Assembly (NCBI GenBank): GCA_963924565.1 | Contig: OZ004610.1 | Coordinates: 27,404,001 to 27,468,000, forward strand | DNA length: 64,000 nucleotides | Source of the DNA: Ascidiella aspersa | Lineage: Eukaryota | Direction of reading: 5' to 3' | Part shown: positions 18,020 to 42,500 of the stretch, one piece after another | Numbering within the stretch: position 1 is the stretch's first letter | Layout of the letters: every line of letters begins with the position of its first letter | Notes under the pieces: model-generated | What the model was told of the DNA's origin: nothing | Seen by the model: only the letters and a program-made list of their open reading frames with translations | The model's database searches: none | Made by a program: the position numbers and the translations under genes

Positions 18020-21000
18020 ATGAGTATTGTCGAGGCACCGGCACCAACCACGTTGGAAACGAGAATCGAGTGCGATGTGGCACCCAATATGATCCGCTCC
18101 GAAAACAACTTCTTCATGGGATTGGAAGTGGTAAGGAATCATGCGCGCGGTTTTATTGATGTTGATCTAAAAGCAAGGCAATATTCTATGAAAATGTTTA
18201 AGAGTGCCCTTCAATAATAATTCAGGGAGATTGAAGGCTAAAATGCATTTAATACTGAACTGCGAGATAAGATAATGTGAATTATATTTAGAACCATATT
18301 GTTCAAAACCGGTTATGTTTTGGGGGGTTAATACACTTGGCTATACTTTTGTTTTATAAAATACTTTAGCTTTATGAACATAACTTGCATATAAAAAAAC
18401 AAAAAAATATTTCAATATGTTTTGCAATTTCATTCGGCGTCTATCAGCTGATTGGCAAAATTCACTTGCACAAAATGGATTACGTAAGCAGTTTGGTATC
18501 AATTCGGTGTTATACTCTCATATACAATAAATTTTATTCTAACACACACAATACAGCAATGGCATTTCAGAGATGTAAAGTATATTTTTTTTGTTTATTC
18601 TTGGCTGTATTTGCCATGTGCTGTTCAGCCAACAATGGACCGGATGCGGAGTGATCGATTAAGCTGATAAAATGGTTGTTGACACTTCGTTATCACGTTT
18701 AATCGTCGTGTAAATTACCGCGTGCAATAACCATCACGTCCGCACGTGTTTAAGTGATTTATTGTTGTATTTACAAGTATTTGTTGGGTTTTGGCTGATA
18801 CAGGAAGAAACATTATCCCAAAAGCTTTAAGACTAGTGATAGTTGCTTAATGAACTCCTGGTAAACAAATACAAGATACGGATTTAACTGCCTTTTTCAA
18901 CCATTTTTGTTCAGGCAATCAGGTTTTTTAACCTAATACGTAGCAAAGCCGAAGTTTTTGATTTCCTCTAAAACAGTGATTCCCAACATGAGGGTCGCAA
19001 GGGCTGTCTGGGGTAGGGTCACCATCGGGCCATCAGGGGCACATGCAAGGGCGGGGAGCACGTGGCCATGGCCCCACCTAAACTGACTATGACCACTAAA
19101 TAACATTTTTTGTAGGTAAAATCTGTAAAAAAAACTTCGAATCTAAATATGTAGCTAGAAATCATTTTATTTTTATACTTTTTTACCCTAAAGGCGTCAT
19201 ACGTCCTATCGTAACATCGAAAATTAAGTTTGGGCAACTTAAACGTTATAAAAGTATTTTGTTCTTCGAGCGAATCAGTTACATCGTTTTAGCTTTTGTA
19301 TTGACAGTATAACAGCTGTTCATCTTCATTCAAAAAAACGAAATATTATGTTCATAATGTTGTACTTTTGATAACGTCACGTATAGGCGTAACTTTGTGA
19401 TGTCATATTTTGAGGTTGTGACGTCAATGTATGATGTAACTATGTGACGTCATCTCTAAAAAAAATTGTCATGCCAAACCTAAACAAAATTTTTAGATCC
19501 GCGCCTGGCCCCTAATAGCATTCGATTAAGCAAAGATTGACAAGAAAAAACAGTATGAAGTAAATGCTTATAGCAGTAGCCCAACGACAGTCGTAAAAAT
19601 GTGTTCAGGTGTTATTTTCTTCAGTGAGCCAGTTATGTTTTTAACCCCATCATTACGCCCGTTTCCAATCAATGAATATAGTATAATCTACAGTCAAACA
19701 GTTTTGCTAATAAAATTGTAATGCTACGAATGGAGGCCTAAACTGTAACTTTAGCTTGTTGTGCATACTTTTGGTCACGTTTCGAAACACTTAGTCTAGA
19801 AGTGCAAAGATTTTGATGATTTGAATGTGATTTTGATTGTGGTTTTTGTGTTTCATACACCAAAATTGGGGGGGAAGTTTTGGAAAACTAAAATGGGAGT
19901 CTCAAGAACAAAAAGGTTTGGAACCACTGCTCGAAGACATCTAGAAGTGGCCAACAACATAATCCCTAAAAACATTGGATTCTGTCACTAATTTGGATCG
20001 CTTTATTGCCTACTATAAGTCAAATATAGCCTATAGCTTTTGGTTCGACAACCAGACTGTGACGGCCAGCAATATAGGTCATACTCAAGAATAGCAGTAT
20101 TCAATCACCGGTTCGTTGGAGCTTGTAGTAAGGTTTACAAAACACGGGATTTAGGTTTTCCAACGTAAACGTTTCGTAGTTTCTGCCGCAATCTTAATTG
20201 TAATGTATTTTTGCCTTAAGCAGGCTTGAACAAGGCTAAAATACCATTGAGCAGTGTAATAACGTAGGCCAATATAAACAAGCAAACAATATGATCACAA
20301 GAGTTTTTATTTGGAAAATAACTTTAATTGTTGAGTTTAACGGAGTTTCACCGCTTTTTTGTTTTGCTTTTTATTTCGAACTTTACGTTTTGCCTTGACG
20401 GCCGAAAATTGAGCTTTTCGAAATTTTTTGGGGAGAGAACTAGTTTCGAATCGATTTTTAAGTTTGGAGGTAAGTTGCAAATTCCTCGTTGTTGATATAT
20501 ACTGATGGCTTCAAATAGGGCATTTTAAAATAAACGTTTGACATGTTTTCACCAACACAAACTCGTTTTATATGGTCATTTGAGAGTCGCGATTGCACTG
20601 AAAATGTTAAATAGAGTATAATCACTCAATATTCAGCCAAATAACTTAAAGTATTTAGAGTGTAACCAATCGCATGAATAAAAACGCACCAGGTGACGGA
20701 AAATTAGTTAAAAACTAATCACCGAGTTCTACAAAATTCATAAACTCCAAATGCAATTCGAAATCTACTGGGCCGGACAAACTGAACCAGGCTAAAACCC
20801 ACTGTATACGCAGGAGTAACATCAAACCTACTCTGTCGCCCATTCATGCACTTATTGGCATAAAAATTTGTTCTTTCAGAAATTCACGGTCGAATTTGCA
20901 AAAGTTAACCAGAAACAGGAGGAGGATCCGAAGTATCTCTTCACCGACAAAGAGTTTCCTCCGGACGACAATTCTCTCGTCTTCAAGAACAAAGCTCCGG

Positions 21001-24000
21001 CCGGAGTGGTCTGGAAACGACCTCATGTGAGTTGACCAAGTCCCGATTGCAGTGTTGTAATGACTTAAGTCAATGACGTGACTTAATTGCACTTAAGTCA
21101 CTGTTTTCAAATGACTTGACTTGACTTAAGTCTTTGGGAAAATGACTTGACTTGACTTGACTTAAGTCTTCGGGACAGATGACTTGAGTTAAAGTAAAGT
21201 GTTTTCATTAAACATTTCTTTGTAAAATTGGGTTATTTATCCTAATATTTGCACGTAAAACAATTTGATTGCCCAATTACAAAACAATATTAGAAGCGCA
21301 ATATTTAATAGAACATAGTCATTTCCTTTGAGAATTTTTAAAGTGATAAATATTTTGTTTTAGAAAGAGTGATTATTTTTTTAATTGGCTGAAATTTCGT
21401 GATAATATTAGTTTATTTGTGAATAGGTTTTCAGCAGATTTACAAAAATACGTACAAGGAATTCACTTTTAAGAATATCAAAGCCCATACAGAAGTAGGA
21501 CATCAGATGTTGAAAATGAATAAAGAGTTATTCGAAACGTTCAAAATGATACCTACTTCTGTATGGGCTTTGATATCCTTATTAGGTCTTACTACAACCT
21601 CCAACCATTATGCTCCAAAGAATTCACTTTTATTTTAAAGAATTTTTTTTTATTACACTTAATTTTTTCTAGGTCTCTAGAAAGGGTTTATTGTAGGATG
21701 TCCGTAAGATAACACACGTGTTTACAACACGATATTAGCTGGTTAACAAAAGGTGCTCAAATATTTATCTTTTACGATTTTTGTAAATTTACCTTTGGTC
21801 AGTACCACACATAGGGTACCACTGTAAACACCCTATGTCTCTACCTTGGTCTTGTCTTAACTGATGTTTTTCTGCTTCAGGAATTCGTGAACGATGCTGT
21901 TTTAGTACACGGCTTCGGCAAAAACGACGTTGCCCAGGGTGACCTCGGAGATTGCTATTTCCTTGCCGCAGCAGCTGCGCTTGCGACAACTCCTAAGCTC
22001 CTGACCAAAGTATGCTTGCAGTTGTAAAACTGTATAATTAAATAACAAGATAAATTTTAGTTGACAGACGTATTTTTCCTATTTTGACCCTGATACACGG
22101 TTGTGCGAAAGCTCATCAAAAGTAAAATGCTATATAAACACTGCCACTTGTTTTCAATTAACAAATGAAAGCTATGAACGACGGTTTATAATTTTATTTA
22201 AAGCAAAGCAATAACAAACCACTGAAGTGCACTTGGGCACTGTTTTTAAATGACTTGACATGGAAAAAATAGCTTTTGGATTGATCGTTTTGTGCACATG
22301 ACTTGACTTAAGTCCTTGTGTCAAATTACTTGGGTTGAAATTACAAGTGTTTTTGTAAAATATTTCTTCGCAAAATTGTTTATTTTCATCTCAGTTTTTG
22401 GCACGAAAGCAATCAGCTTGCTATGTTGCGATGTCGTTATTTTTTAGTTGAACTATTTCTCATACATGGACGGTAAAAACTCGACTTGAACCCAAGTCAT
22501 TTCAAAATGACTTGGATTATCTTCTGTTATCTCTTATTTTTAATTAAACAACAAACTTATTTTCCTCTCGTTTTTCAGCTGATCCCTTCCAACCAAAAGC
22601 TGACCAAGGACGGCAAGGCTCCGGAGTACAACGGGATGCTGCAGTTCCGCTTCTGGCGCTTCGGACGCTGGGTGGAGGTTGTGGTGGACGACTACCTGCC
22701 CACCATGGCCGGCTACGGACTCATCTACGGCAGGAGCACAGACCCCCGGGAGTTCTGGGTCTCGATGGCCGAAAAGGCCTACGCCAAGTAAGTCGATGTT
22801 GCTTGGATACTATTGGGTTGTCCAATAATATTGTTTGGGAGCCAATATCCGATCCCAAGTGACGGTATTGATACGCCACCGATATTAGAGTGGTATTGCC
22901 GACATGATACCAAATTTATGTAGGAATTTCGGCAATGATTTGCGATTCAGCGCAATGATTTTCTAAGGTAATTTTTTTTTTATGTTTTAATAACAACTAA
23001 ATGTAACTCAACCTCTTTACGCTAAGGTAAATTTTGCCATGAAAATCTGGAAAATCGCTTTGAACGTTTCAATCGCTTCTTGTTTGCTGCATCTTAATGA
23101 CGTCATTTAGTATCGGATCTCGATGCTTTTTGTTCAAAATATCGTGTCTCGGTATTGAATTAAAATGTTAAGCGGATATTAATTGGATACTTACTTCTCG
23201 GGTGAAGTACAACTTTATGACACCTCACGTTTTCCTCGTTTGAATGTAGTCAGAAGACAATGTTTATATAAGTTAGAGGGTTTGGGTGAAATTAGTTTAT
23301 TTTATAAGTGGGAATAGATCCATTGCTTACACATTTATTACGACGCATTTATTAGCTTAACTATTTCTGAAAAAGCGACCAGGGTAATTTTAAGCGAAGT
23401 GTTACTTTTCGCGAATAATAATTAGTGACTTTTTGATGTTGCTGTACATAAACGTACCATGGATTTTCTAAAAAGACATTCCGAGATTAAATAAATGGAA
23501 TAGTTACCAAATATTTTTAGTGTAGCTCTAACGAGTGTTGAATTGATTTTTACTGACTTGACTTTTGCAAGAAACTTTCATTTTTTGCAGGGCAAACAGC
23601 GTTTTGTGATTAAGTGTAAGCCCCCCTTTTTGTATTGTTTTTTTAATTGTAAACGAATCTCAGTAAGTTCTTTGATGTTTTATCGAGATGGCAATGAAAC
23701 AGATAACTGATTTGTGATGCTATAACCTGACGTTGCAGGTTAAATGGGTCGTATGAGGCGCTGAACGGAGGACAGAACACAGAGACCCTCGAAGACATGA
23801 CAGGAGGCCTGGCGATTCAGTACATGATCAATAAGTCGGACAAGAACACCGTTTACAAGCGGATTGCAATGTTCGTGCTAATCTACCGCAGTACTCGATA
23901 AAAAACGTAAAATATTTTTTTAGCTGGACTAGATTTCTTTTCAGGCGATTAAAGAACGGGCTGATCATCCAAACCCAGTAGTCACAATCATTGTAATTTC

Positions 24001-27000
24001 AAAAAAGATGGAAATCCTTAACTGTACAGTAAAACAACAACCCCTGTTAAAATAGTAGCAAATTTATTTTACCAGAAACTATTTATTTAATCGTAGGCTG
24101 TTGAATAAATATCGGTCAATATCTACTAGATTAACTAGTACCTTTCGAAAATCTAAAAAGTGCCTTATATAGGCTTATACTGATGTTACAAAAACAGTCA
24201 TATACAGAATAAACAACTAAATTAAAAAAGACAAATATTTGTTTTTTTAATCGGCATCGCCAGTTTCTAAAGTTAAATTTGGTAAAAGCAATTCAATCGT
24301 GGTTTGCAATCCGCTTTCCGTATAGATTGTAATTGATCCTTGCGCACAGATTAAATGTGAAACAAATAACTTTTTTATTTCACATTACAGGGCTAGACGC
24401 CATCACAGCTTCGTGTGTGCGAGTTTATTCGCCTTTGGAACGAAGGCAAAGGAGGTGGAAGGCAAGGGATTGGTGGCAAACCACGCCTACACAGTCACCG
24501 GAAACGCCGTTGTAAGTTTACAGTTGGCCCAGTCGCTCTGTAAGGACCGATATTTTCATGATTTGTTTTGTTGTGTTTACCTTTTCTCGGCTTATTCACA
24601 AACAAAGATGCGCTAATTCCTTAACAAATGTTTGGTTCCACCTCTTGTGTGAAGCTAAAATTTGCACAGAAACGCAAATGTGATTGTTGGTCGGCCAGTT
24701 AGGTTATCAACACTCCAGTGTAAAGGACAGAATTTCTCTTTCCGTGGCGATTTCGTGATTTTTCCGTGGCGATTTTCATGATTGTTTTTACACATGTACC
24801 TACTACGAAAGTAAGCCGATTGATTTTCAATGTTTAAATGAGAAAAGGGGCTAATGCCGAGGCCAGTAATAACTAGACTCTAGTTTGATTAAATTTTGCA
24901 GCCACTGAAACGACGTAATGAGGGTTTTTTTCACCAACTATCTCTGTTTTGACTATTTCACTATCTCTTTTTATTAAAATGCTATCGTCTTGACATCTCG
25001 CAATGTAAATGTGCCTGTTAGAAAAATAAACAACTCCCACTTATGCAAACCTAAGTGCCGGCACCCGAATCATTTTTCGTTGAACTATCCAATAAATCAT
25101 GACATTGATTGTTGTGACAAGAAACGCGGAAAATCACACAAACCATTAAAGCCTGCTTTTCTAACTACCATTGGGCCGACACAATTTTCGATCCAGTTGA
25201 TAAGTTTCCGTATGTAACTTGCTGTTTTTGCCGCAGGTAAAACTAAGCACAGGCGAGTCGGTGAAAATTTTGCGCGTTCGAAACCCTTGGGGCACCAACA
25301 AGGAGTGGACAGGCTCTTTCAGTGACAAGTAAGTCAAAAACGAGTTTCCTATTTTAAAAGTTAGGATATTTTTGGTTTATTTTGAACTGATTTGTCCTTA
25401 AGATGGAGGCAACATTTGCACTTTTAATAACTCTTCACTAGCCTTGGCTATTCACAGAATTACGACATTTCTAATACTTTGCTTTCATTCTTTCTAAATC
25501 TAAACAATAATGTCAAAGCCGGACTACTGTACTTTTTCCGCAATGCACTACATTGATATTAATTTATTATTTGCCCAACATTCATGAACAAGGCCAAACA
25601 TGCAGCAATTATAACCCATAAGTACATTATGCCAGTTTTGAACACTATTACCACACTTGTTATATGTGCTACACATTTTTGTTTTGTTGAGTCCGCAAGT
25701 TAGAACAACGTCCATGTTTTATTGATTTTTGTGTACCGTCTTTAATTTAGTTTATATAAGAACACAGCGAAACAATGGCGACAAAAAGGAGACGAGATAA
25801 AACACAATATTAGCGAGGGACGATTTAGCAAGAAGAAAACAAAAGATCGCTGGGTATTCGGGACTTGGATTCAATAGAGCACTGTCCACTTGCAAAGAAC
25901 GTTATTCATTTTATTATTCTTAGTAAGGATAAGACGTTCCGATTTCGGGACCGATTTGATCATTCTGAGAAACTTGTTTAAATTCAGGACGGATTCCTTA
26001 CAACGGTAAATACATACGTTCACACAAGAAAAAACAATTCAACAGGGTTTCAAATTAATCCGCCTCTATACCAAACCACACATAAATACGCTCTGTTTCC
26101 CAGGTCAGAAATCTGGGAGAAGGTAAGCGACGCCACCAAGCAGGCGCTCGATTTCAAGGTGAAGGGCGACTCCGAGTGGTGGATGTCGCTGGAGGACTTC
26201 TGGTCCAACTTCTCGTCGATTACCATTTGCACATTGGGGCCTGATTTTAACGAGGACGGCGACCTTTCGCACGTCAGGTATACCATAAAGATACAAAATG
26301 GCGGCCGAAATACACCGGTTGCTCGATTGTTAGCTGAACGCCCCGTCGCCAGCTAATTTTTAGTTTTAACTTTTTTTCGTATACGCCAGGGGTAGCCAAC
26401 ACTTCGATCGCGATCGACCGTTCGATCGTCACGTCATTAGAGTAGCTGCCGCGCATAAGCCGAACATTATAATAACCACTTTCTGTCTGGACGCGCCTAT
26501 AAAAAGCGTTCTTTGACGTAATGAGTTCACCTCTCGTTAAATTTACGCCGCAGGCTTGGAATGCAATAAACGCTCGAAATGTTCAATAAGTGTTCTTGCG
26601 ACTTTTTGACTGAACCAGTCGATCACCAGTCTTTAAAAAATATTTCAGTTGATGGCAATCAAACGTAAGTTGGCTTTACACCTTCACTATACGCTATTAC
26701 AATTGCGTTGGTTCAAAAAAAAATAACCATTTCTGTCCCTGGCATTGGAGTTAACTTGAAAAACTGAAGAGTTAGGATATTTGTCTATTTTTATGATACG
26801 CTGCATTAATCTTTTCACAGAATAGCTTTTTGTTTTTTCTGCGTTGCATTCTGTTCCATAATGCAAAACGTCTTGCAAAATACATTCCAGGGTTTAAGTG
26901 TGGCCGACATGCTCAGATGTTTTTAATTATGTGCAAACTGGTACCACAATTTAAAACTTTTTTCGGCGACCTATATTTAAAAAAAGGAGTTGAAAAATAA

Positions 27001-29952
27001 TAAAAATAACCATAATAGACAAACAAAAATCATATTTGTATTTTTAGCGACAGCGCAAACAAAACCTATTTATCTCTAAATACTGTGTCCTGGTTGTTGC
27101 AGTTCCCAAATAAAAAATCTTCTATTTTACCAACATAACCTTGTTTTCAGTTGGCATCTTTCTACTGTACGTGGTCAGTGGCTGGAAGGAAAATCAGCTG
27201 GTGGATCGAGAAACAACCCGACGTTTGACACAAATCCGCAGTTTCTAATGCATGTTCTTGAACCGGGTACGTTTTTTTTTCACGCTTTGGAGGCAATACG
27301 CGCTAAACTAGAATATCGCAAACTTTCTTCTGGGTTCCGATATTATTGGGATGTTTGTGTTCAACAACAACAATTTGAGGAAAAAAGTTTAAGGTGCAAC
27401 TCGTCCGATAGCCTACTAGGGTGGTTTCGGTGCCGATTCGATATTTCTGTAGGAGCCATTATTTGCAATCAAACCAAGCGATTTCTGCCGTAAAAGGTCA
27501 ATTTACCAAAAAGCAGTAGGTTAACCACTTATCAGAAGACCACCTTAACCACTGCTGGGATTAATTAAATTTCCTAACTCTAAGGCAAACTAAGCCTAAT
27601 TACCTAAAAAAAATTATGTATTAATTTAAACGTTTTAATCGATCGGAAGGATCAACATATAACTTTTTCAATTAACCAAGAAAAATAGAGATAAAAATGT
27701 GCTCTTTTAGACGATCCTGTTGAAGAAGAGACCGAGGAGGGAGAAGAAGATATGACCAAGATGAGCTACGTCCAGGTGGGATTAATGCAGGAACACAGGA
27801 GAGTCGACAAGAAGACAGTCGTGCCCACCTACGGAATTGGGATGACCATCTTCAAGGTATTTTCACAGGAGACGACTTTCGTGGTTCCCAAAAAGGGAGG
27901 CCCAAAACATGGGTCGTTGCTGCGGCTCACTGGGGTACCATTTTTAGTTCTCAAGGGCGCCGAGAAGTATTTGGGAATCTTTAAAGGTTACTGATTTGAT
28001 AACTTATGATCCTATTGAAACACTCTTCGTGTAAGATTAGTGTACAATAAATAAAAGTTGTTGATTGTACTGTCCCAGTAGTGTTTACTGTGATCATACA
28101 GTAAAGCCTTTATGGTAGGGGTGCCGCAATCTATTAATTATTTACGGTTGGTGCCGCAAGCCATAAAAGGTTGGGACCACTGTCCGAGCCAACATGTAGT
28201 GTGGAGAAGCTTTTTCGGTGTTCTGTTATTGCGTCGTTTATTAACTGTTTTCCATACTAAATATAGCTTTTTGTAGAAGCTCAGTTCATTATATTACAGA
28301 TAAAGCTGAAATCGTTTATCACTTTTTGTTAGCAGAATCTAGAATAATTTTATACAAAATGATATAAAAAATTTCCTTCAAAATTTGGATTGTTATTTAT
28401 ATAAAAAAAAATTGGACAACAAGAGCCCACCACTGTGGTAAAACTTTTTTAGCATTAGATAACACGAGCATTTGGGGAATAATGGTAGGAGCTAGGAGGT
28501 TATAGTAAGACGTAGAAAGAACACCAAAGCCCATATAGAGGCATAGGTACGATTTGAAGCGTTTCGATTAAATCTTTATTTATTTTCAACTTCCTTAATT
28601 CACTTCGATGTTGAAAGTAAATAAAGAGAAACGTTAAAAAGTCTACCTATATAACAGGGGTGGTCAACCTACGGCCCGCGGGCCAGATCCGGCCCGCCAA
28701 CGCAAATCAGAAGGCATTCTTCGTATTTTCTGCTTATTTTAATTACCTAAAAGCATTTTTTTGTGCTTAGTTTAAATCTTGTTCCTCCATTAATTGTAAA
28801 TCGCAAAATACCCTAGTTTTAACTCTGCTTAACAGTCGTTGCGGTTGTTATAATAAGATGCGTACGGTCTACACTCTACAGAGTTGAAAGTTAACGGCCC
28901 GCAGAGACCTTTCTGGGTTTGATTTTGGCCCGCGACCAGAAAAATGTTGCCCACCCTTGCAATATAGCAGGGATGGCGAACCACTGTCCCGCGGATCACG
29001 AAGTGATCCACCACACATTTTTATTGACCCACTTGTATCTCTAGAAATATCGAAATGTTATTAATCATTTTCAGAAAAGTATAAATAAAAGAAATCAATT
29101 CTTTGTTAGATATCACTGTACTGTTTAAATCAGGGCTACCTAATCTGTGGGTTGTGCAAAAGTGTCCTAGGGGTAGAGGTATATTAACTGCACTTCAACA
29201 AATGCGTGCAGAAAAGCAGACAACTAAAAGCATTTTGTTTATCGCTGAAAAAGGGTGGCGATCCTGTAGAAAAATATAGAGCTCGCAGACTAAAAATTAT
29301 GAAAAACCTGGCTAAACCATGCTTGAAAAGCTTTCTGCCGAACTCCTCCAATTCCATAAAAAATGGTTAAGCATTTGTTAACTATTTAGGTTCGTATTAT
29401 CCGTGGGAATCCGAATTTGGAAATCGTCCAAAAACCTTAAATTACTAGCCCAAGCAATAACACTAAAACGACGCAGCAGCAAAGTTTTGCGTAAAATTAG
29501 AATATAGTTAAATATATGACCCACTTGTGCATTTTGTAAGAATTAAGGTCGTGTTTGTGATCCGTGCGATGAAAAGGTACGCGATCCCTGCTATATAGCC
29601 TACTTCTTTATATAGACTTTGCTATTCTTACTCCGCATGACAAGATATGTTTTAAACGCTTATATAAAAAAAACATACAAAGGCGTGAAATACAGTACCA
29701 ACACCTTCTTAAAATCTTTTTCAGCTGAATGCGAAGCGGGATACCAAACTGAATGCAACCGAGGTCCTTACAATCCCAACCGCCGCCGAAAACCGCTCGT
29801 TCGTTCAAACTCGTGAAGTTACTCTCACCGCTTCCGTCGAACCCGGATATTACGTCATCGTACCCGCCACCTTCAGCGCCGGAAAGTCGAGTTCATTTTT
29901 CCTGCGCGTCTTCACCGAGAAGCCGATCGAACTTACAGAGTTAAAAGGATAG
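18020..29952 (+). CDS. Calpain-family cysteine protease, about 534 aa, CysPc plus C2-like domain III, no penta-EF-hand. Exons: 18020-18130, 20880-21026, 21881-22009, 22579-22787, 23739-23870, 24391-24511, 25237-25328, 26104-26277, 27151-27266, 27711-27856, 29725-29952
   Basis: The catalytic triad motifs QGDLGDCYFLAA, GLVANHAYTVTG and RVRNPWG are intact. Also present: FRFWRFGRWVEVVVDDYLP, EKAYAKLNGSYEAL, and domain III motifs SAGGSRN..F.TNPQF and PGYYVIVPATF..FFLRVFTE. Exon lengths sum to 1605 nt. Exon 1 is inferred from an ATG plus a phase-0 GTAAGG donor and is less certain. Confidence 0.92.
21471..21619 (+). mobile_element. Fold-back element with a U3-A8 variant minimal hammerhead core at its tip (family C, copy 1)
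   Basis: About 29-bp inverted arms enclose TTGAAAA-T-GAATAA-agag-TTATTC-GAAACGTT (21510-21541). Flanked by the direct repeat gaattcactttta at 21459-21471 and 21620-21632. Confidence 0.7.
22082..22158 (+). ncRNA. Degenerate family D hammerhead copy
   Basis: ttttgac-cCTGAT-ACAC-ggtt-GTGC-GAAAGCTC-atcaaaa. The downstream tataaacactgccacttg resembles the right arm of the 33442 copy. Confidence 0.55.
28478..28592 (-). mobile_element. Degenerate family C copy
   Basis: The reverse complement reads gTTGAAAATaaataaagatttaatcGAAACGCT followed by a diverged arm and tail (ggaggttatagtaagac...caaagcccata on the plus strand). Confidence 0.6.
28655..29590. mobile_element. Two abutting hAT-type MITEs (28655-28959 and 28968-29590) sharing a target site
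   Basis: TIRs caggggtggtcaac / gttgcccacccttg and cagggatggcgaacc / ggtacgcgatccctg; three related 8-mers ctatataa, caatatag and ctatatag. Confidence 0.75.
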
Positions 29953-32357: not shown

Positions 32358-35115
32358 ATGACCACCGACAAGTTAAGCGAAGAGGAACAGGTGATGTTTC
32401 GGGAGGCCTTTAAGAAGTTCGACAAGGATGGAAGTGACGTAGTGAGCACTGATGACGTAGGAGCAGTGCTAAGAGCGGCCGGACAAGCACCAACCGAATC
32501 GGAGTGTGACGACTATAAAAAGGTAAGGCACAAGTGTAGCAGGGTCTGACGTTAGCACTATTTTTTTACTTGTTTTTGTTTGTTTTACAAAATAAAAGCG
32601 TTAAGGTGTAATTATTTTACCGTGCTTTATAAAGAGTGCAAAATGATTGAAAAAACACATTTTTCTACTATAAAATTCTTAACATTTGTAGTTTAATTCT
32701 GCAATGGTAAAGCGTGTTTTAATCGTTATTTTGCTTTCAAAATTCATATGGTTTAGAAAGCACAGGAAAATATTCTTTTCTAGCTATAATTATGAGGTGT
32801 TCTTGCGTAGTGTAAGAAAATGTTTTATAGGTGCAATTTGACTTGCTCGAAATTACAAAACCATAATTTAAAGTATATTGCAGCCCTAAAAGAATCTTTT
32901 GCAATTCACGCCAAGTTTGACGTTTAGATTTTTGTTTTCTGCACCAATTTGACAGTCGTAATCAAGCGTGCTAAAAATACAGAAGCTCGTACAAGTAAAT
33001 TATGGCCAAAATATAACTATGAGGTTAGTTTTTATGTTAATTTGCGCTTGGTGTTGACAAATATCAGGATCTATCGAGAAAACCGTCATAATGTTATACG
33101 TGACTTTTCTGGAGTTGGAAGTTATTATCAAAAGACATATCGGCAACAGCCGCAGACTATGAATACGTCAGTCTTCTACCGACATTTTGAACACCCGCAT
33201 TTCCTGCTGCTTTATAAAAAGTTAAACCAGCTTCATTTACACACTAAGGTCTATTGAATTATCCTTGCGTTTTCAGGAGTTGGACCCCAAGGATTCTGGC
33301 GATGTGGAATACAAGGACTTGCTCGATTTGTATTCTCGCATTATGAAATCAACCTACGAGATGGACGACGAACTTACAGAAGCCTTCAAGTGAGTATATG
33401 TTCTAACTTTATATATGGCCGTATTTGTCTAATTCTAAATAGAGGAATCAGGTGGAACTGTATAAAGACAAATTGTAAACTTTGACCTGATGAAGCACGG
33501 CTGTACGAAAGCTGCTCGAGAATTAAATACAATTTGTCTTTATACAGTGCCACCTGATTCCTCCATGCTCTAACTCAGTGCTTCTCGACCTATTGGTCGC
33601 GACCCAAAATTGGGTTGCTGTTAGATTTGGTTGGGTCGCCGACCGCAGCAATCACATGTTTATACTAATTGAGATTGGTTCTGAGAAGGATTTCTCAATT
33701 AAGAAAATTAAAGAAGCAATACAAATAATGTCTTATAATTAATTATTAAAATGTGAAATTCTTTATGATAATGCCTATTTTTTGTTCGCTTACAAGAAGC
33801 TAGTTTTTAGTTCGCTTACAAGAAAAAACAATTGGGTCGCCAAAGCTTAGTCGTCATACTTACGCCTAATATTTGGGTTGCCGCGAAAAAAGGTTGAGAA
33901 GCACTGCTCTAACTGATGCACTTCAGCAAAACTACTGTAACGTTTTGCATTAACATTTGTAAAAGTTACACCTAAAGCTAAATGCGAATTTCAACCCCTG
34001 AACTTTTCTATCTAGTGTTTGAGCCGCATAGCGCCTGGTATAGGTTACCATGGGCACATTTGTTCTAACACTCTTTTATATGCTTGGTTTCTGCTTTAGG
34101 TAAGCCTTTTATTAATGTCCTGTTCTAAGTGATAGTTAAATTTTAGGTATTTTCTATGGCCTTTATTTTTTTCTGTTACATGCCAAATAAATAGGCCCAG
34201 TCCTATTTTGGCTTTTTTAATATTGTATTGAATTATACTATTTGCGTTTAAAATGTCCAAACTTTGAAACCTGTTTGAATTTTAACAACATTAAAAGCCG
34301 TTTCTAGAAATGAAAGATTTGTACACATGTACAAGGTGATCGAGCCATTTTGAAGTCATTTTTGATTGACGACAACGGCTTACGTACCATATAAGCCTTT
34401 GACAAATTAACCTAATCTGTCCATCAAGATGCAAGAAAGACAGTGTAGAAAAACTTATAGGCTGTGGTGAGGTTCGAACTCATGACCTCCGGCCATACCG
34501 GGACCGTAATTCTACCGATAACTGCGTTCCACAGGCACAAAATGGAGCGAGTCGCACGTCGTGAAACACCCATGACACCATTGCTTGCCGCATCCTGGTA
34601 TCAAAAACAACAACTTCTAGAAACTAAGTTAATTAAACGTTACAGACTTGTAAGTTCTTCCCTAAGAGTCTCTTTTTTACGATTCCCCCAGAGTTTTGCT
34701 TGATCCAATTCTCAAGTCCGGTAGTAAATCAATAACAAGCTTTTAGCAAAAAATGAAACGACTCTCATCAACCTTCGTTTTTTTATACTTTAAATCAAGG
34801 GTTTCCAACCTTTTTTACACCGTGAAAAGTTTGATAAACCAATTCCCCCCAACCTAAAACCCCTTGGGGGTCATGGCCCACAGGTTGAGAACCCCTGCTT
34901 TAAATCGATATCTAAACCGCAAAAACGTCAGGGTTTTCGACAAGAACTTCGACGGTTACATCACAGCGGCCGATTTGCGTAAGCACATGACCACACTGGG
35001 AGAGAAGCTTTCTCAGGAAGAAGTTGAGGAAATGATAAAAGACGCCGATCCAAACGGCGAGGGAAAGATCAATTACACCGAGTTCAGCTACGCAATTATA
35101 CACGACAACACGTGA
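32358..35115 (+). CDS. Divergent calmodulin-like four-EF-hand protein, 153 aa. Exons: 32358-32522, 33277-33389, 34932-35115
   Basis: Translation [26 protein letters not shown]...[55 protein letters not shown] is colinear with calmodulin. EF1 and EF2 loops are degenerate; EF3 and EF4 are near canonical. Confidence 0.92.
33442..33563 (+). ncRNA. Hammerhead-like motif (CTGATGA...GAAA) at the tip of a 36-bp hairpin (family D)
   Basis: Arms 33442-33477 and 33528-33563 have one mismatch. The loop contains CTGATGA(33487-33493)-A-GCAC-ggct-GTAC-GAAA-GCTGCTC. Confidence 0.65.
33576..33906. mobile_element. hAT-type MITE
   Basis: TIRs cagtgcttctcgacc / ggttgagaagcactg; TSD ctctaact; a related copy lies near 5354-5550. 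Confidence 0.9.
34460..34536 (-). mobile_element. tRNA-derived sequence (SINE head or tRNA pseudogene)
   Basis: On the minus strand: ctgtgg...ccacag acceptor-like stem, A-box-like cgcagttatcggtag, and T-arm tgag-TTCGAAC-ctca. The anticodon arm is imperfect. Confidence 0.55.
34796..34897. mobile_element. Short hAT-type MITE
   Basis: TIRs caagggtttccaacc / ggttgagaacccctg; TSD ctttaaat. Confidence 0.85.
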
Positions 35116-36501: not shown

Positions 36502-39500
36502 TCAGTCAAAAAGCGACAGTTTTCCTCCGTTAGCAACCTGCCCGTTCGGTTCCTTTTCCGACGCCTGCTTAAAGTTGGCAATATCCTCCATCGTGATGTC
36601 GAATCCGCTCTCGTAGGTTCCACCGAGTTTCGGCTCGTTGTCCGAGTTCAGTTTCATGGCGCCGTCGTACTCGACCGAGTAGCGTGGCGCGTACGAGTCG
36701 GAATCAGGCTGACCCCTTCCGTACCCGTCCTCCATGCCGTGGTCGTAGAACTCGACTATCCCGGACGGGACTCGGTCGCTGGCCTCCGACTGCGACTCCT
36801 CGTTGATAGTTGCTAGGGCTGGATCAATGGGATGACGATCGTAGCGATCCGGGGAGGACCTGTCTTCAATCTCGTAGTTTTCTCCTTCGTAGTCTTCCGA
36901 AACCGGGAGCTGGTTGAGTTTGGCGTAGAGGTCATCCTCTTGGAAGTCGGCAGAGGAAGCTTCGACCTCGTCAATCGCATCCAGATGATCTTCTTTGTCG
37001 TGGTGATTTGATCCACGGAGGTCATCCTCGATAAGCTTCTTGTCGTCATCCTTGTAGTATCCAACTTCCACTTCTTCAACTCCGTTGGTTCCATAGTATT
37101 TTTCCGCATCTTTTTGAGCATAATCCCGGAGTCCCTCATCTTCGTTATCTTTGCCTGGTTGATACCCAAGGTCGTCTTTTAGTGCTTCATTTGTGTTTTT
37201 GATTTCCGTGTGGTCATACCCGTACCCCTGGTTATCATCGTCGTCATTTACTTGTCGTTGGTCATTCACAGTTATACCCTCTATTTTATTCTCTTCCCCC
37301 ATTTTTGCATCATCAAGAGGCAAATCCTCATGGATCAGGCTGCTTCGGCTCCCCGAGATCGTTGAAGAAGTCTCGCTTTCTGATGCATCTTTCTCCTCAT
37401 ATTTAAAAGCCGAGTACTCTTCCTTATTTTCATTTGGGCTGTCATCGTGTATCATCAGTTCTTCTTCGGTCCCAGAACTGCTCCTTGATCCTGCGTCCGA
37501 ATCCTGGTTTACACCGATTGTTCTCGGGACTCTTTCGAGTTCGATTTCCGTTGATGAGATTCGATTTGGCTTCGAAGGCTGATGAAGAATAGGTAATTGT
37601 TAATTTTTAAGTTGGATTTTTTTACTTATGCATTTTTGAGCAACATAGCCCGACCTTTTGTCGTAACTGATTACCTTCTTGAGATTTATTGAACTTATCA
37701 CTGTGTTTAATGTAATGTGACGACTTCAAAATTGTAGAGACCTATACTGCAGGTTATACACTCAACAAACGCGATACTAACAAAATTAACTATTAATAGA
37801 TAAAGTAAAACTTTAAATTTAATATAAGCCTAAATTTAGAATTTGTAGACTAGAAAAGTTTTAACAAATACCACGAACCTTTATTATAACAAAACGGATA
37901 TATAATTTGATAAATGTTGGTATTAAATTTCTATTTTATAACTAAAATTTATACCACCGATTTAAAGTATCTTGATCTCGCTGAGATATTTTAGACCAAA
38001 TAACCGAATGACAAAGTTTTGGTTTTAAACTTTTTGTTGTACACTACACATATATTTGTTCATTTTTGTCGCTTTTAGTTTTGTCATGTAAAATACTGTT
38101 CGCAGTACTATTTTATTATTTCTCGGTCGTATGATTTGAACCAAAAGCACTTGCAATTTGTGGATAATAATGTTAGCTTTGATACCAAACCACCAACAAA
38201 TTTTAGCGATAACGCACCTTGAAAGAGATAGGCCGACTCATCTCCCTTGACAACTTAAACCTCAGGGCCATGATCCCGTTGGGTCTGGATGCTAGCTCCC
38301 GGAGGCACTTCCACTTGTTCCTCCCCTCCAGGCACATTCCGCTGAAAGCAGGACTCGTGGCCGAGTTGACGGAGAACGTGGGAGAGTTGAGTCCGCTCGA
38401 ATCCAACATCCAGGGAGCGCAGAACAACACGCCTGTTGGAAAATCCAAGCTAATATTGAAGAAGGTGGCATTTTGAACGTTATAGTTTTCGTTCTAAATA
38501 CTACCTACTTATCTTTAATTAACCTACTAATTTCAGTTCATCTGCCCTAAGTTGAACCACATAGAAAGTTACCACAGGTTTTGCGCTACGACTTTTTTCT
38601 AACAATGCCGCCCCAATATTAAACACAATAAATACTCTATTTAGTTGTGCAGTCCTGTTTGAAAGTAGGCCTATACAATAACCAAAACCTCCAAATATGT
38701 AGCACAGTAAACTTTGCTCACCTGGCAATTCGACTGAGATGTCGAAATCGAAGTTGAACTTTTCCAAATCCAGTTCCGGTGTTTGTTCTGTATCATTGGT
38801 GGGAGTTATTTGCACCTACACAATCAAGAAGTTATATATGAAGAATCACAAAATAATTCCCAAATATTATTTTTTTAGTAAAGGGAGCAAATATCGACTT
38901 TTATTCAACGGTAAAACACCTACTAAATTCATTGTACCACTGATGCTGTGATAAATGATTTGTAAAATCGGGTATTGTAAATAACAAGATGTTATAAATT
39001 AAAGCAACAACTGGCGTGCTGTCTAGGTCAGTGGTTCTCAACCGCCGGTCCGCGTCCACATTCCTGTCGGCCCGCCAAATATATTACAATTTTATATCTG
39101 CAAAATTCAGGATGTTAAAGGCTTATCCATCAAATTTAACTTCCCCAGCTCCGTAATTTGCAGCTTTATGATGTAACATAGAGTTAATGGTCTACTTTGA
39201 ACTTTATCGTACGTCACAATGCAAGTGTTGTTCCCAACTGTTTAAATGTAGCTACAACAAGTTTAAGTCTTAAACTTTAAGACCAGTTGTGTGTGAAAGC
39301 TAAAAAGTGTTAGTTGCATACTGTTGCGTTATTAAATTTTGGGTTGATTTTGATTCTCAAAAGTCCACCGGTCCGCAAAATTTGTTTTAAAATTTTACCG
39401 GTCCGAATGCTAAAAAGGTTGAGAACCACTGGTCGAGAACCACTGGTCTAGGTTAAAATCAGTGATGAAGTATATTTTATATGTTTATATTGTGCGAGTA

Positions 39501-42500
39501 TAAATTAGAAGTTTTTTTGTGGTTTCTGCTGGACATTTCAGTTATGTCGAAATGACCATTTGAAGCATATTCCATTACCTCGAGTTTGGTTCCGTAGGGC
39601 ACCGACTGAGGGGGGATTACAATGTCGGAATCGTTGGGCAAGTGAATGACTCCGTCGCCACCAGAACCCTTCCATTGCTTGTTGAAGTCGTGTCGGTTAA
39701 ATCTACGAAAATACGCAATAATATCTCGTAAATTGGGCAACGACGTAATGTCCTCATTTTGCAGAGATTGTTCTATTTTAATATTATCATCTGAAGACAT
39801 TAAATCATTTAACCACAAATATGTGTTCTAATTTAAGAGTAAATCTGCAAACTGAGAAGGGACAATCGTAAAACTTGTCCCTTTTCGGATAATAAAAATG
39901 AAATCAATAAACATGACAAACGATTACTTGTAATGCGGTTTATATAATTTTACACAAACAAACCGTAGTTTTTCAGAAACAATCCATATAAGGCAATTAA
40001 ATGACAAATTTATAATTTAAGCATAATGGTTGGAGGTTGTAGTAAGACTTAATAAGAATATCAAAGCCCATACAGAAGTAGGTATCATTGATGTTGAAAA
40101 TGAATAAAAGAGTTATTCGAAACGTCCAAAAGAATACCTACTTCTGTATGGGCTTTGATATTCTTATTACGTCTTATAATTTAACGTTTGACATTTTTTT
40201 TAAATCCTCGTAATTCGCGTATTAAATTAGTCTAGAAAAATGATCACTCACGGTGAGTGCAACTATGAAGAAGGATTATTTATGTGCAGCATTGACCGTT
40301 CATTTTAGACTTATGCTTTTTTAAATACATTCAATAATTTCAGTAAAGTGTGCAATGTGTTGTTACCCGTCGACATCCGTGTTGTAATTGTTGAAAGGGT
40401 TTCCTCCGTAAAAACTGTTTCCTCCTTCTGAGAACATCGAGAGTCTCGAAGATGCGCGTGACGTCATATATTGTTGCGAGGCTTCGGAACGGATCGTTCT
40501 CTCTGTTTGCAAAAAAAAACACATCAAGGATAAGGTGGAAAATAGATGTTTTTAACTTTGATAAAGTTTTTAACTTTGATAAAGTATGTCGCAATTTACT
40601 GACAAGAACGGGTACAAAGTGTGGCTGTCTAAAATCATGGACGTGTTTAAACACATATTTATAGTGAACTGGTATCGTACTTAACAAACACACGTAATAA
40701 GGGGAACAAATTTAGATTATTAGTGTTTAATTATGAAGAAAACTAGAAATATTTTACTTAAAACAGGGCCCTGTACAATGTTAAAATAGTTTGACAATTT
40801 TTAATTTTTTCTTAATAAAATCTCCATTACTAATTCGTGTTTGAATTAACATTGAACTAAAAAACAATTCCTGACAGGTAGAACATGACAGCCAAGTCCA
40901 CGATGTTACGTATTTTTGCTAAATGCATAGCAGTTGTATTTGATGGGCAAAACAACGCAGCACATTGCCTATTACATTGGTAACAAACAGCATTCGCCGT
41001 ATTTAACGATCAGTATATCGAGTTTCAAATCTAATTAGAGCACAGCGCCGAATGTTCCGGTAGCACTCTTATACCTTCAAGCTGTTTTTCCTCCCATAAC
41101 AGAATACCCCTGATCTCTTCAGTGGCAGCAACATCACTCGGTTTTCGTCCCTCCTTGTCACGTAAGCGAACCTGGAGAAAGGCTTGCTTTAGTGTCGTGT
41201 TGACAATTTCGAAGCACCCATAAACTTGGACTAAATCGCTCCCTAGAGTCGTTATTGCGCTGCGTCATTTTAGGGTGGAACAAACCGCATTCCATATTTG
41301 CCAAGTGCAAACGGAGAACGGCTACACGGGGCCACCTTTTTAGAATTGGATAGAATAATATACATATAGACAGAGATCCAATATTGTAATGACTTAAAAG
41401 TGCAGTTAAGTCACTGTTTTCAAATGACGTTTTAAAAATGACTGCTTACTATGTGTTGCACTTTAGGTACGTTATTGCTCGTAATTGTATAGTTACTAAT
41501 TTTAGAAGTTTGACGTTTAATGTTTATAACAAGGACTTGACTTGCTATAATTATGACTGACTCTGACATCACGATTTATTGAAAACGACTTGGACTTGAG
41601 TTAGTTAACAAATGACATGACTGGGTCTTAAGTTTTCAAAATGACTGCTTTACAACACTGCAGAGTTCTAAGAGGATAACAGTTCGCCACTTCACTCATA
41701 AACATTTAGTACCATACCCTGATTTTGTGACTCGGGGAATGACAGACTGGGTTTCTAGTGCAAACGATTAGTGTGTTAATCGTACCTCGATTACTTCGAT
41801 TACAACGGCCTTACCTTAGCGTGAAACTTTAAAAGAAGAAGAACGGATTTGTTTCCCGACCTAGAAGCAACGTGCAAGGCCGTTTCACCTGCAAAAACAC
41901 AATTTGTTAAATTTTATGACGCGCCACCGTGAACGGTAATCCGGTCCCACACAGTACAAACACCCGATCCGACTAACTGCTTAATTGGAAGCCTTCAAGT
42001 CGGGTTAAAATATTACTTATTCATCCTTTAAGCCGATAATTAAATATCTGCTAATCGACTTATTTAGATGATAAGGCCTAATGCGATCCTTTAATTATTC
42101 TCGACTTACTTGTGCTTATTTATTCGGCAATAAGGTAATGTTGCTCATGCATGGACACGAGTGTAAATTTGATGTTTCATGCGCAGTAAAAATAACGCAT
42201 CACATAAAGTGATTTGTTTTATAGCCTACACTCCTTATATTACGTCCATGCTTAAAACAAACGGAATGTTTCTTCATTGGTATATTTGAACACATTAACA
42301 CTGCAAGGTCAAGCAAAATCAAAAAGTATGTCACATATACTAGGCCTATATCGGCAGCGAAATCTTCATCCGTTACTTTAGAAAAAAATAACAGTACCTT
42401 TTTCGTTCTTCAAATTGGGGTTTCCCCCGAACCGCAGCAGTATGCCGGGGATCATGGGGTCGACCCCCCTGAAAGCGGCGCACAAGTGGAGTGCGGTGTC

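What the first reader, a model, noticed from the sequence alone, without database searches (positions are those of the whole stretch)
21459..21632. Hairpin element tipped with a compensatory U3-A8 hammerhead and flanked by a long TSD
Seen: the loop of this fold-back reads TTGAAAA T GAATAA agag TTATTC GAA ACGT T, and the long inverted arms directly extend stem I (2 bp, a small internal loop, then about 30 bp). The same TTGAAAA occurs in three copies, so it belongs to the source element rather than to post-insertion decay. Established: core positions 3 and 8 pair in the active hammerhead, so C3-G8 to U3-A8 is a compensatory double change. A 13-bp flanking duplication here and an 11-bp one at the other copy fit target-primed retrotransposition, not the fixed 8-bp or TA TSDs of the DNA MITEs nearby. 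Inference: a roughly 190-nt rod-like RNA, possibly self-cleaving and retroposed, disguised as a MITE. This copy is in sense orientation within calpain intron 2.
Basis: partly seen in the sequence, partly recalled or inferred. Interest (0 to 1): 0.85.

Follow-up and report, generated by a model that had tools for sequence, protein, structure and literature searches.

The report
Penelope-type mini retroelement inserted as hairpin
The fold-back is one of over 1,500 copies of a 114-base non-coding retroelement that inserts like this genome's Penelope-like retrotransposons and carries their minimal hammerhead motif in a variant described in 2014, so it is a clean example of a known kind.

Summary
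Window 21472-21619 is a strong fold-back flanked by an exact 13-bp duplication. Its tip reads as a minimal hammerhead with a U3-A8 core. The second copy has an 11-bp duplication.

The "190-nt rod-like RNA" does not hold. The mobile unit is a 114-nt sequence with a fixed 3' end (21506-21619 here). Alone it folds no better than shuffled sequence. The left arm is a second, partial, inverted copy added at insertion. Its junction differs in almost every copy, some copies lack it, and it never carries the last ~30 nt (the "tail").

Three features match the genome's own autonomous Penelope-like element (PLE; reverse transcriptase plus GIY-YIG endonuclease):
- head-to-head arms;
- a tail on one end only;
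- 10-14 bp duplications.

That PLE carries a canonical minimal hammerhead at the same distance from its 3' end.

The motif meets every published minimal-hammerhead feature except a long helix I. The U3-A8 variant was reported in Schistosoma PLEs in 2014. Cleavage is untested, and insertion ends do not pile up at the predicted cut site.

This scan already reported the same family on other DNA of this genome (s1-787249, s1-788655).

The parts
21459..21471 (.). Left target-site duplication, GAATTCACTTTTA
   Evidence: Exact 13-bp repeat of 21620-21632.
21472..21499 (-). Inverted partial copy of the unit (reverse complement of unit positions 47-74). It has no tail. Its outer end abuts the TSD.
   Evidence: Alignment to the 114-nt unit (L001 = this copy); arm I1.
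21500..21505 (.). Junction filler ACATCA. ACATC is the reverse complement of unit positions 1-5.
   Evidence: Fillers of this type recur in other copies.
21506..21619 (+). Full 114-nt unit, 98.2% identical to the reference copy L023, ending in the fixed 3' end ..GCTCCAAA.
21510..21541 (+). Minimal hammerhead-like motif:
- core U3-A9, TTGAAAA (21510-16)
- extra T (21517)
- stem II GAATAA/TTATTC with loop AGAG (21518-33)
- GAA (21534-36)
- palindromic ACGT (21537-40)
- H17 = T (21541)
The predicted cut is before C21542.
   Evidence: Sequence; descriptor match; features as listed in PMC4209133.
21590..21619 (+). A/C-rich 'tail' (unit positions ~85-114). It is present on this arm only.
   Evidence: Outer ends of inverted arms cluster at unit positions 73-84 in young copies and never include the tail. 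The same holds in the genome's autonomous PLE.
21620..21632 (.). Right target-site duplication
40021..40173 (-). Second copy, with the tail-bearing arm on the minus strand.
- Reverse complement of unit positions 40-109 at 40020-40089.
- Tailless arm, unit positions 1-86, at 40090-40176 on the + strand.
- 11-bp TSD at 40010-40020 and 40174-40184.
28471..28649 (-). Third, old copy (77% identity). The full unit is on the minus strand. The opposing arm (unit positions 1-50) is cut by another repeat.

Best explanation
The fold-back is a dead insertion of a 114-nt non-coding retroelement, copied into DNA by the machinery of a Penelope-like element (PLE).

The unit has three parts:
- a minimal hammerhead motif with a U3-A8 core, 4 nt from its 5' end;
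- about 45 nt of body;
- a ~30-nt A/C-rich tail.

Proposed steps at insertion (inferred):
- The GIY-YIG endonuclease makes a staggered break, which gives the 10-14 bp duplication.
- Reverse transcription is primed on both DNA strands.
- One cDNA starts at the very 3' end, so it carries the tail, and usually reaches unit position 1.
- The other starts internally at positions ~73-84, so it has no tail, and stops at a variable point.
- The two cDNAs are joined head to head.

This yields a genomic hairpin that mimics a MITE.

The hammerhead motif is inherited PLE equipment. By analogy with published PLE motifs it is at best a weak ribozyme that needs a dimer or a protein. Nothing here shows that it defines the ends of the inserted copies.

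Shown: the anatomy, the copy statistics and the parallel with the resident PLE. Inferred: two-strand priming and which PLE supplies the enzyme.
For: 1. Family anatomy. In about 60 loci the tail-bearing arm is nearly always unit positions 1-114 with a fixed 3' end. The upstream inverted arm runs from an inner end of 1-53 to an outer end of 73-84.
2. L021 and L023 are bare units with 12- and 11-bp TSDs. L032 has only an 11-nt inverted piece.
3. In 100 sampled copies the 20 nt upstream of unit position 1 are nearly all different. Roughly two thirds, by eye, are inverted-arm pieces broken at many points. So the hairpin is made anew at each insertion.
4. TSDs are 10-17 bp, mode 11-13.
5. The genome has an autonomous PLE: an ORF with RVT_1 plus a C-terminal GIY-YIG domain.
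6. That PLE carries a canonical minimal hammerhead: CTGATGA, A, GCAC/GTGC, GAA, AGCT, T, with a 6-bp helix I.
7. Its insertions show the same signature: head-to-head arms, one ending ~27-36 nt short of the other (the tail), and TSDs of about 10-12 bp.
8. The geometry matches. From hammerhead core to tailed 3' end is 116 nt in that PLE and 110 nt in this unit.
9. Published PLE traits:
- an inverted 5'-truncated copy at the 5' end, and a 30-40 bp tail at one end only (PMC8557442);
- a PLE protein that cleaves and extends both strands, initiates internally in an AC-rich region, and has a tail lying between the two start sites (PMC11167929).
10. Published motif traits (no helix III, palindromic 15.2-16.2, an extra nucleotide after A9, G10.1-C11.1, a long helix II, a U3-A8 variant) are all present.
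11. When both arms carry the motif, they share the same H17 base in 10 of 10 cases, my count from the rows.
Against: - The unit has no sequence similarity to the one autonomous PLE family I could read. Other PLE families could not be fetched.
- No copy among about 60 loci, nor among 100 upstream contexts, runs on into a coding region. So the enzyme donor is unidentified.
- Helix I is only 2 bp in the bare unit.
- The hammerhead-competent dimer is less stable than the best dimer fold: -8.7 against -15.2 kcal/mol.
- Only 1-2 of 100 sampled arms begin at the predicted cleavage site.
- Rfam reports no hammerhead. However, it also misses the canonical-core PLE motif at 33487, so this is uninformative.
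- RNA data could not be obtained.
Confidence: 0.85

Rival explanations
1. Same PLE-type retroposition, but the inverted arm arises by snap-back. A single cDNA reaches the RNA 5' end, folds back and copies itself. There is no independent second priming event on the other DNA strand.
For: - Both arms carry the same H17 variant in 10 of 10 pairs.
- Many junctions are near-perfect palindromes centred on ..ATC A GAT.. with fillers equal to the reverse complement of unit positions 1-10.
Against: - Snap-back gives no reason for the inverted arm to stop at positions 73-84, exactly where the tail begins.
- Window copy 2 and several copies of the resident PLE have the longer arm on the tailless side. 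There the tailless arm holds sequence that the tailed arm lacks, so it cannot have been copied from that arm.
- A PLE protein extends both strands in vitro.
Confidence: 0.2
2. One reading: a ~190-nt rod-like, self-cleaving RNA (retrozyme or viroid-like). The long arms are part of the transcript and extend hammerhead stem I.
For: This genomic copy folds into a very stable rod. The motif sits at its tip.
Against: - Bare 114-nt units with TSDs exist.
- Junctions differ from copy to copy.
- The unit alone is unstructured.
- In full hairpin copies the motif is paired with its own complement (L026-L028, L030).
- There are no tandem head-to-tail arrays delimited at the cleavage site, apart from one 143-bp array of whole hairpins in L013.
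- There is no pile-up of ends at the cut site.
Confidence: 0.04
3. A SINE-like element mobilised by a LINE. The hammerhead-like motif is a chance look-alike with no function.
For: - TSDs are variable and 5' truncations occur.
- Cleavage is unproven and helix I is weak.
- About 16 chance descriptor hits are expected genome-wide, extrapolating.
Against: - There is no poly-A or simple-repeat tail.
- The inverted arm plus a one-sided 30-nt tail is a PLE signature, not a LINE one.
- The resident PLE places its canonical motif at the same position.
- All four non-descriptor traits listed in 2014 are present.
Confidence: 0.07
4. A fold-back DNA transposon (MITE) with long terminal inverted repeats.
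For: Superficial appearance: 30-bp inverted arms flanked by a direct repeat.
Against: - The arms are not terminal on the right; a 38-nt tail follows.
- The outer and inner ends of the left arm vary.
- Many copies have no inverted arm.
- TSD length varies from 10 to 17 bp.
Confidence: 0.02

Closest known systems
Minimal hammerheads (min-HHR) of metazoan Penelope-like elements, including the U3-A8 core variant of the Schistosoma mansoni Cercyon PLE (Cervera & de la Pena 2014, PMC4209133)
   Same: - No helix III.
- Palindromic 15.2-16.2 (CG here).
- An unpaired nucleotide between A9 and G10.1.
- A G10.1-C11.1 pair.
- A long helix II (6 bp).
- U3-A8 in place of C3-G8.
- Mostly dispersed single motifs, or pairs on opposite strands 100-700 bp apart or less.
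   Different: Helix I is only 2 bp in the bare unit, against 4-5 bp in the Schistosoma families; a 2-bp helix I is reported for Drosophila virilis. The sequence is unrelated. Activity is untested here.
PLE insertion architecture: inverted 5'-truncated copy plus a 30-40 bp tail at one end (Craig et al. 2021, PMC8557442), and two-strand cleavage/extension with internal initiation (PAc, PMC11167929)
   Same: - Head-to-head arms.
- A ~30-nt A/C-rich tail on one arm only.
- AT-rich targets.
- The same signature and the same TSD size as the resident autonomous PLE.
   Different: The whole element is only 114 nt and encodes nothing. Its 5' end is sharply defined rather than randomly truncated.
Non-LTR retrozymes of animals (Cervera & de la Pena 2020, PMC7229834; Li et al. 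2026 preprint, 10.64898/2026.07.22.740005)
   Same: Small, non-coding, hammerhead-bearing, and proposed to be non-autonomous derivatives of PLE pLTRs.
   Different: Retrozymes are tandem arrays with one type I hammerhead per unit and give circular RNAs cut at the hammerhead site. This family is dispersed as single insertions with TSDs, and its ends are unrelated to the cut site.
Non-autonomous Chlamys PLE derivatives such as MRC1 (Craig et al. 2021)
   Same: Short non-coding elements mobilised PLE-style.
   Different: Those share their 3' ends with identified autonomous families. No such partner was identified here.

Membership tests
PLE-type insertion (Penelope-like element derivative) | Inverted 5'-truncated copy directly upstream of the main copy | tested here: met
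   Present in most of about 60 loci and in roughly two thirds of 100 sampled copies. Feature definition.
PLE-type insertion (Penelope-like element derivative) | [quoted passage not shown] | tested here: met
   The tailed arm ends at unit position 114. The inverted arm ends at 73-84. The resident PLE shows a 27-36 nt difference.
PLE-type insertion (Penelope-like element derivative) | Same target-site duplication as the genome's autonomous PLE | tested here: met
   10-17 bp, mode 11-13, against about 10-12 bp in six PLE copies.
PLE-type insertion (Penelope-like element derivative) | RT plus GIY-YIG ORF in the element, or a 3' end shared with an autonomous PLE | tested here: not met
   - No coding sequence lies next to any of 60 loci.
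- There is no similarity to the PLE family read here.
- Other PLE families could not be fetched.
Minimal hammerhead of PLEs (min-HHR) | Conserved boxes with a 3-8 pair, GAA, A15.1/U16.1 and H17 | tested here: met
   - The motif reads TTGAAAA ... GAA A CG T T/C.
- H17 is T in 65, C in 34, A in 1 and G in 0 of 100 listed copies.
- No C3-G8 version of this family exists. There are only 19 C3-A8 and 4 U3-G8 single changes.
Minimal hammerhead of PLEs (min-HHR) | Extra nucleotide after A9, G10.1-C11.1, helix II of 6-8 bp, palindromic 15.2-16.2 | tested here: met
   T; G-C; 6 bp; CG. Criteria.
Minimal hammerhead of PLEs (min-HHR) | Helix I of 4-5 bp | tested here: not met
   Only C-G and A-U pairs are possible in the bare unit. 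Longer pairing exists only where an inverted arm was added.
Minimal hammerhead of PLEs (min-HHR) | Self-cleavage after H17 (as a dimer or with protein) | not testable with these tools
Indirect evidence: no excess of arm ends at the site.
Rfam Hammerhead_1 (RF00163) and other Rfam hammerhead models | Covariance-model match | tested here: inconclusive
   No hit at E <= 10 and no hit genome-wide. The canonical-core PLE motif at 33487 is also missed.
Non-LTR retrozyme | Tandem head-to-tail units, each with a hammerhead, delimited at the cleavage site | tested here: not met
   Insertions are dispersed with TSDs. Unit ends lie at positions 1 and 114, not at 36/37. Only one 143-bp array of whole hairpins was seen (L013).
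MITE / fold-back DNA transposon | Uniform terminal inverted repeats and a fixed TSD | tested here: not met

The most novel reading that the evidence does not exclude
The 114-nt unit may be close to the minimal RNA that a Penelope-like RT/endonuclease can mobilise in trans. Its 5' end lies just 4 nt before the hammerhead core. That would mean the U3-A8 motif is needed in cis, either as a protein-assisted ribozyme or as part of the RT recognition fold, rather than for trimming the ends. As a by-product, sense-strand intronic hairpin insertions like this one would supply long double-stranded RNA stems in host pre-mRNAs.
Probability: 0.25. Interest if true: 0.45.

Novelty: new member of a known kind. 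Interest (0 to 1): 0.25.

Why it matters
The result corrects a tempting misannotation. Repeats that look like MITEs can be retroelement insertions made by two-strand priming.

The family also gives a large natural data set: more than 1,500 arms, with sharp RT start sites at unit positions 114 and ~73-84. This agrees with the 2024 in vitro model of PLE integration.

A 114-nt trans-mobilised unit that keeps the hammerhead motif would be a convenient substrate for asking what that motif does in PLEs. That question is still open.

It does not reveal a new ribozyme class or a new transposition mechanism.

Tried and rejected
- **Rfam scan of 21000-22100 at E <= 10.** No hammerhead. The whole-genome RF00163 search gave 0 matches, with only 74 of 39,749 candidates scored. 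Both are uninformative, because the canonical-core PLE motif at window 33487 is also missed.
- **Search for a C3-G8 sister version of the motif.** None found.
- **Search for an autonomous parent.**
  - tblastn of PLE ORFs against 60 family loci and the window found no coding sequence next to any family copy; the only hits were short, one of them the separate PLE mini-insertion at 33481-33567.
  - The one recurrent upstream context (C2, 4.0-kb period) turned out to be an old hairpin copy inside a non-coding tandem repeat.
- **Shared private substitutions between arms, to tell one template from two.** Too few shared differences to decide.
By eye, no recurrent leader in the 100 upstream contexts. 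This was not tested formally.

Full report
**Observation**

Window 21459-21632 is as described.
- Two 30-nt arms (21470-21499 and 21552-21581) are 97% complementary.
- The RNA fold is far more stable than shuffles: -60.5 kcal/mol, z = -9.9.
- GAATTCACTTTTA is repeated exactly at 21459-21471 and 21620-21632.
- The tip reads TTGAAAA T GAATAA AGAG TTATTC GAA ACGT T at 21510-21541.
- A second copy at about 40021-40173 has an 11-bp duplication and reads ACGT C. A decayed third copy lies at 28471-28649.
- The element lies between calpain coding stretches (within 20820-21032 and 21815-22024), on the coding strand. I did not verify the intron number.

One detail matters. The right arm is followed by 38 nt (21582-21619) with no counterpart on the left. 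In copy 2 the same 38-nt sequence sits on the other side, in the other orientation.

**Family anatomy**

The genome (308.6 Mb) holds this repeat in large numbers.
- 857 exact matches to core + stem II + GAAACGTNC, with none for the reversed control.
- 1,538 arms with an exact 18-mer just after the motif.

I read about 60 loci. They resolve into a 114-nt unit with a constant 3' end (..GCTCCAAA).
- L021 and L023 are bare units flanked by 12- and 11-bp duplications.
- L032 has only an 11-nt inverted piece.
- Most copies carry, directly upstream of unit position 1, an inverted partial copy.
- In young copies its outer end lies at unit positions 73-84, so it never includes the last ~30 nt.
- Its inner end lies anywhere from 1 to 53. 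Short fillers are often the reverse complement of unit positions 1-10.

The window copy is: reverse complement of positions 47-74, then ACATCA, then positions 1-114.

In 100 copies sampled by pattern, the 20 nt upstream of position 1 are almost all different. So the hairpin is not inherited from a hairpin-shaped source. It is made at each insertion.

The bare unit folds no better than shuffled sequence (z = +0.47). Exact TSDs in 30 young copies are 10-17 bp, mostly 11-13, often overlapping the terminal CAAA by 1-4 nt.

These data exclude a TIR transposon.

**What moves it**

The genome has an autonomous Penelope-like element (PLE). [quoted passage not shown]

About 235 nt after the GIY-YIG domain, every copy read carries a canonical minimal hammerhead: CTGATGA, A, GCAC/GTGC, GAA, AGCT, T, with a 6-bp helix I.

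Its insertions show the same signature as the 114-nt family:
- two head-to-head arms;
- one arm ending 27-36 nt beyond the other, an optional 34-nt tail;
- TSDs of about 10-12 bp.

The distance from hammerhead core to tailed 3' end is 116 nt in the PLE and 110 nt in the unit. A mini insertion of that PLE lies in the window at 33404-33566.

This architecture is the published hallmark of PLEs.
- A purified PLE protein cleaves and extends both DNA strands and starts reverse transcription internally in an AC-rich region. The tail corresponds to the stretch between two RT start sites (PMC11167929).

The unit's tail is A/C-rich (..ACAACCTCCAACC..). I therefore read the element as a non-autonomous PLE-type retroelement. 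Its hairpin results from two converging cDNAs. One starts at position 114. The other starts at ~73-84.

A single-cDNA snap-back remains possible for some copies, because of palindromic junctions and the same H17 base in both arms in 10 of 10 pairs. It does not explain two things:
- the tail boundary;
- copies such as window copy 2, where the tailless arm holds sequence absent from the tailed arm.

**The hammerhead motif**

Cervera and de la Pena (2014, PMC4209133) defined PLE minimal hammerheads by these traits:
- absence of helix III;
- a palindromic 15.2-16.2;
- a nucleotide between 9 and 10.1;
- a G10.1-C11.1 pair;
- a long helix II;
- a short helix I.

They also reported a U3-A8 covariant core in the Schistosoma Cercyon PLE, with about 1,300 hits. 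They saw only weak cleavage of dimeric constructs.

The motif here has every one of these traits except helix I, which is 2 bp in the bare unit. A descriptor built from those traits is expected 0.003 times per 64 kb by chance and hits twice in the window.

H17 is U (65), C (34) or A (1), and never G, in 100 listed copies. There is no C3-G8 version of this family.

Against activity:
- The hammerhead-competent dimer (-8.7 kcal/mol) is less stable than the best dimer fold (-15.2).
- In full hairpin copies the motif is paired with its own complement.
- Only 1-2 of 100 sampled arms begin at the predicted cut site.

This echoes the PAc result: hammerhead mutants do not affect insertion in vitro, and no RNA ends map to the site.

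Rfam finds nothing. It also misses the canonical-core PLE motif at 33487, so that is no evidence either way.

**What remains open**

The enzyme donor is not identified.
- The unit shares no sequence with the PLE family I could read.
- No copy continues into coding sequence.
- Other PLE families could not be fetched.
I could not confirm that.
- Expression data were unavailable.
I did not test this.

**Verdict**

- The retroposition inference and the U3-A8 reading are right.
- The rod-RNA and self-cleaving retrozyme model is not supported.
- Both the motif variant and the insertion architecture are already in the literature.
- The same family was already worked up by this scan on other DNA of this genome (s1-787249, s1-788655).

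It is a new member of a known kind, with modest value as a natural minimal PLE substrate.

Noticed in passing
window 33404-33566: Mini insertion of the genome's autonomous PLE family. It has two head-to-head arms, with the inverted tail on the left. Its canonical CTGATGA..GAA AGCT minimal hammerhead starts at 33487, with stem II mutated. The TSD is about 9-10 bp, G[T/C]TCTAACT. Rfam reports no hammerhead there.
   Followed up: partly
window 28471-28649, 38439-38481 and 45045-45204: Older copies and fragments of the same 114-nt family, at 75-86% identity. The + arm of the copy at 28.5 kb is interrupted near 28655 by a GC-rich repeat.
   Followed up: partly
window 21815-22024 (+): The calpain catalytic-cysteine stretch reads GDCYF rather than the usual GDCWF/L. 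The calpain coding stretches are on the + strand, within 20820-21032, 21815-22024, 22477-22788 and 25204-25329.
   Followed up: no
L062 (G000:C11:2088-5303): A small contig carries a 571-aa ORF with a UvrC-like GIY-YIG N-terminus, and a neighbouring ORF with an NTPase-like (GKT-containing) start. It looks bacterial, so it may be a contaminant or symbiont contig in the assembly.
   Followed up: no
L074-L076 (G000:C2:929316-940377): A 4.0-kb tandem repeat with at least 3 units. It contains an old hairpin copy of the family and has no ORF of 120 aa or more in the parts read.
   Followed up: partly
L013 (G000:C2:34865741-34868887): Three head-to-tail repeats (143-bp period) of a whole hairpin insertion, joined without an intervening TSD. 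This is a PLE-like multicopy tandem insertion.
   Followed up: partly
G000:C2:30628752-30640503: GIY-YIG matches spaced 3,422 bp apart, with one more on the opposite strand. This is probably a tandem array of a second PLE family. The sequence could not be fetched.
   Followed up: no
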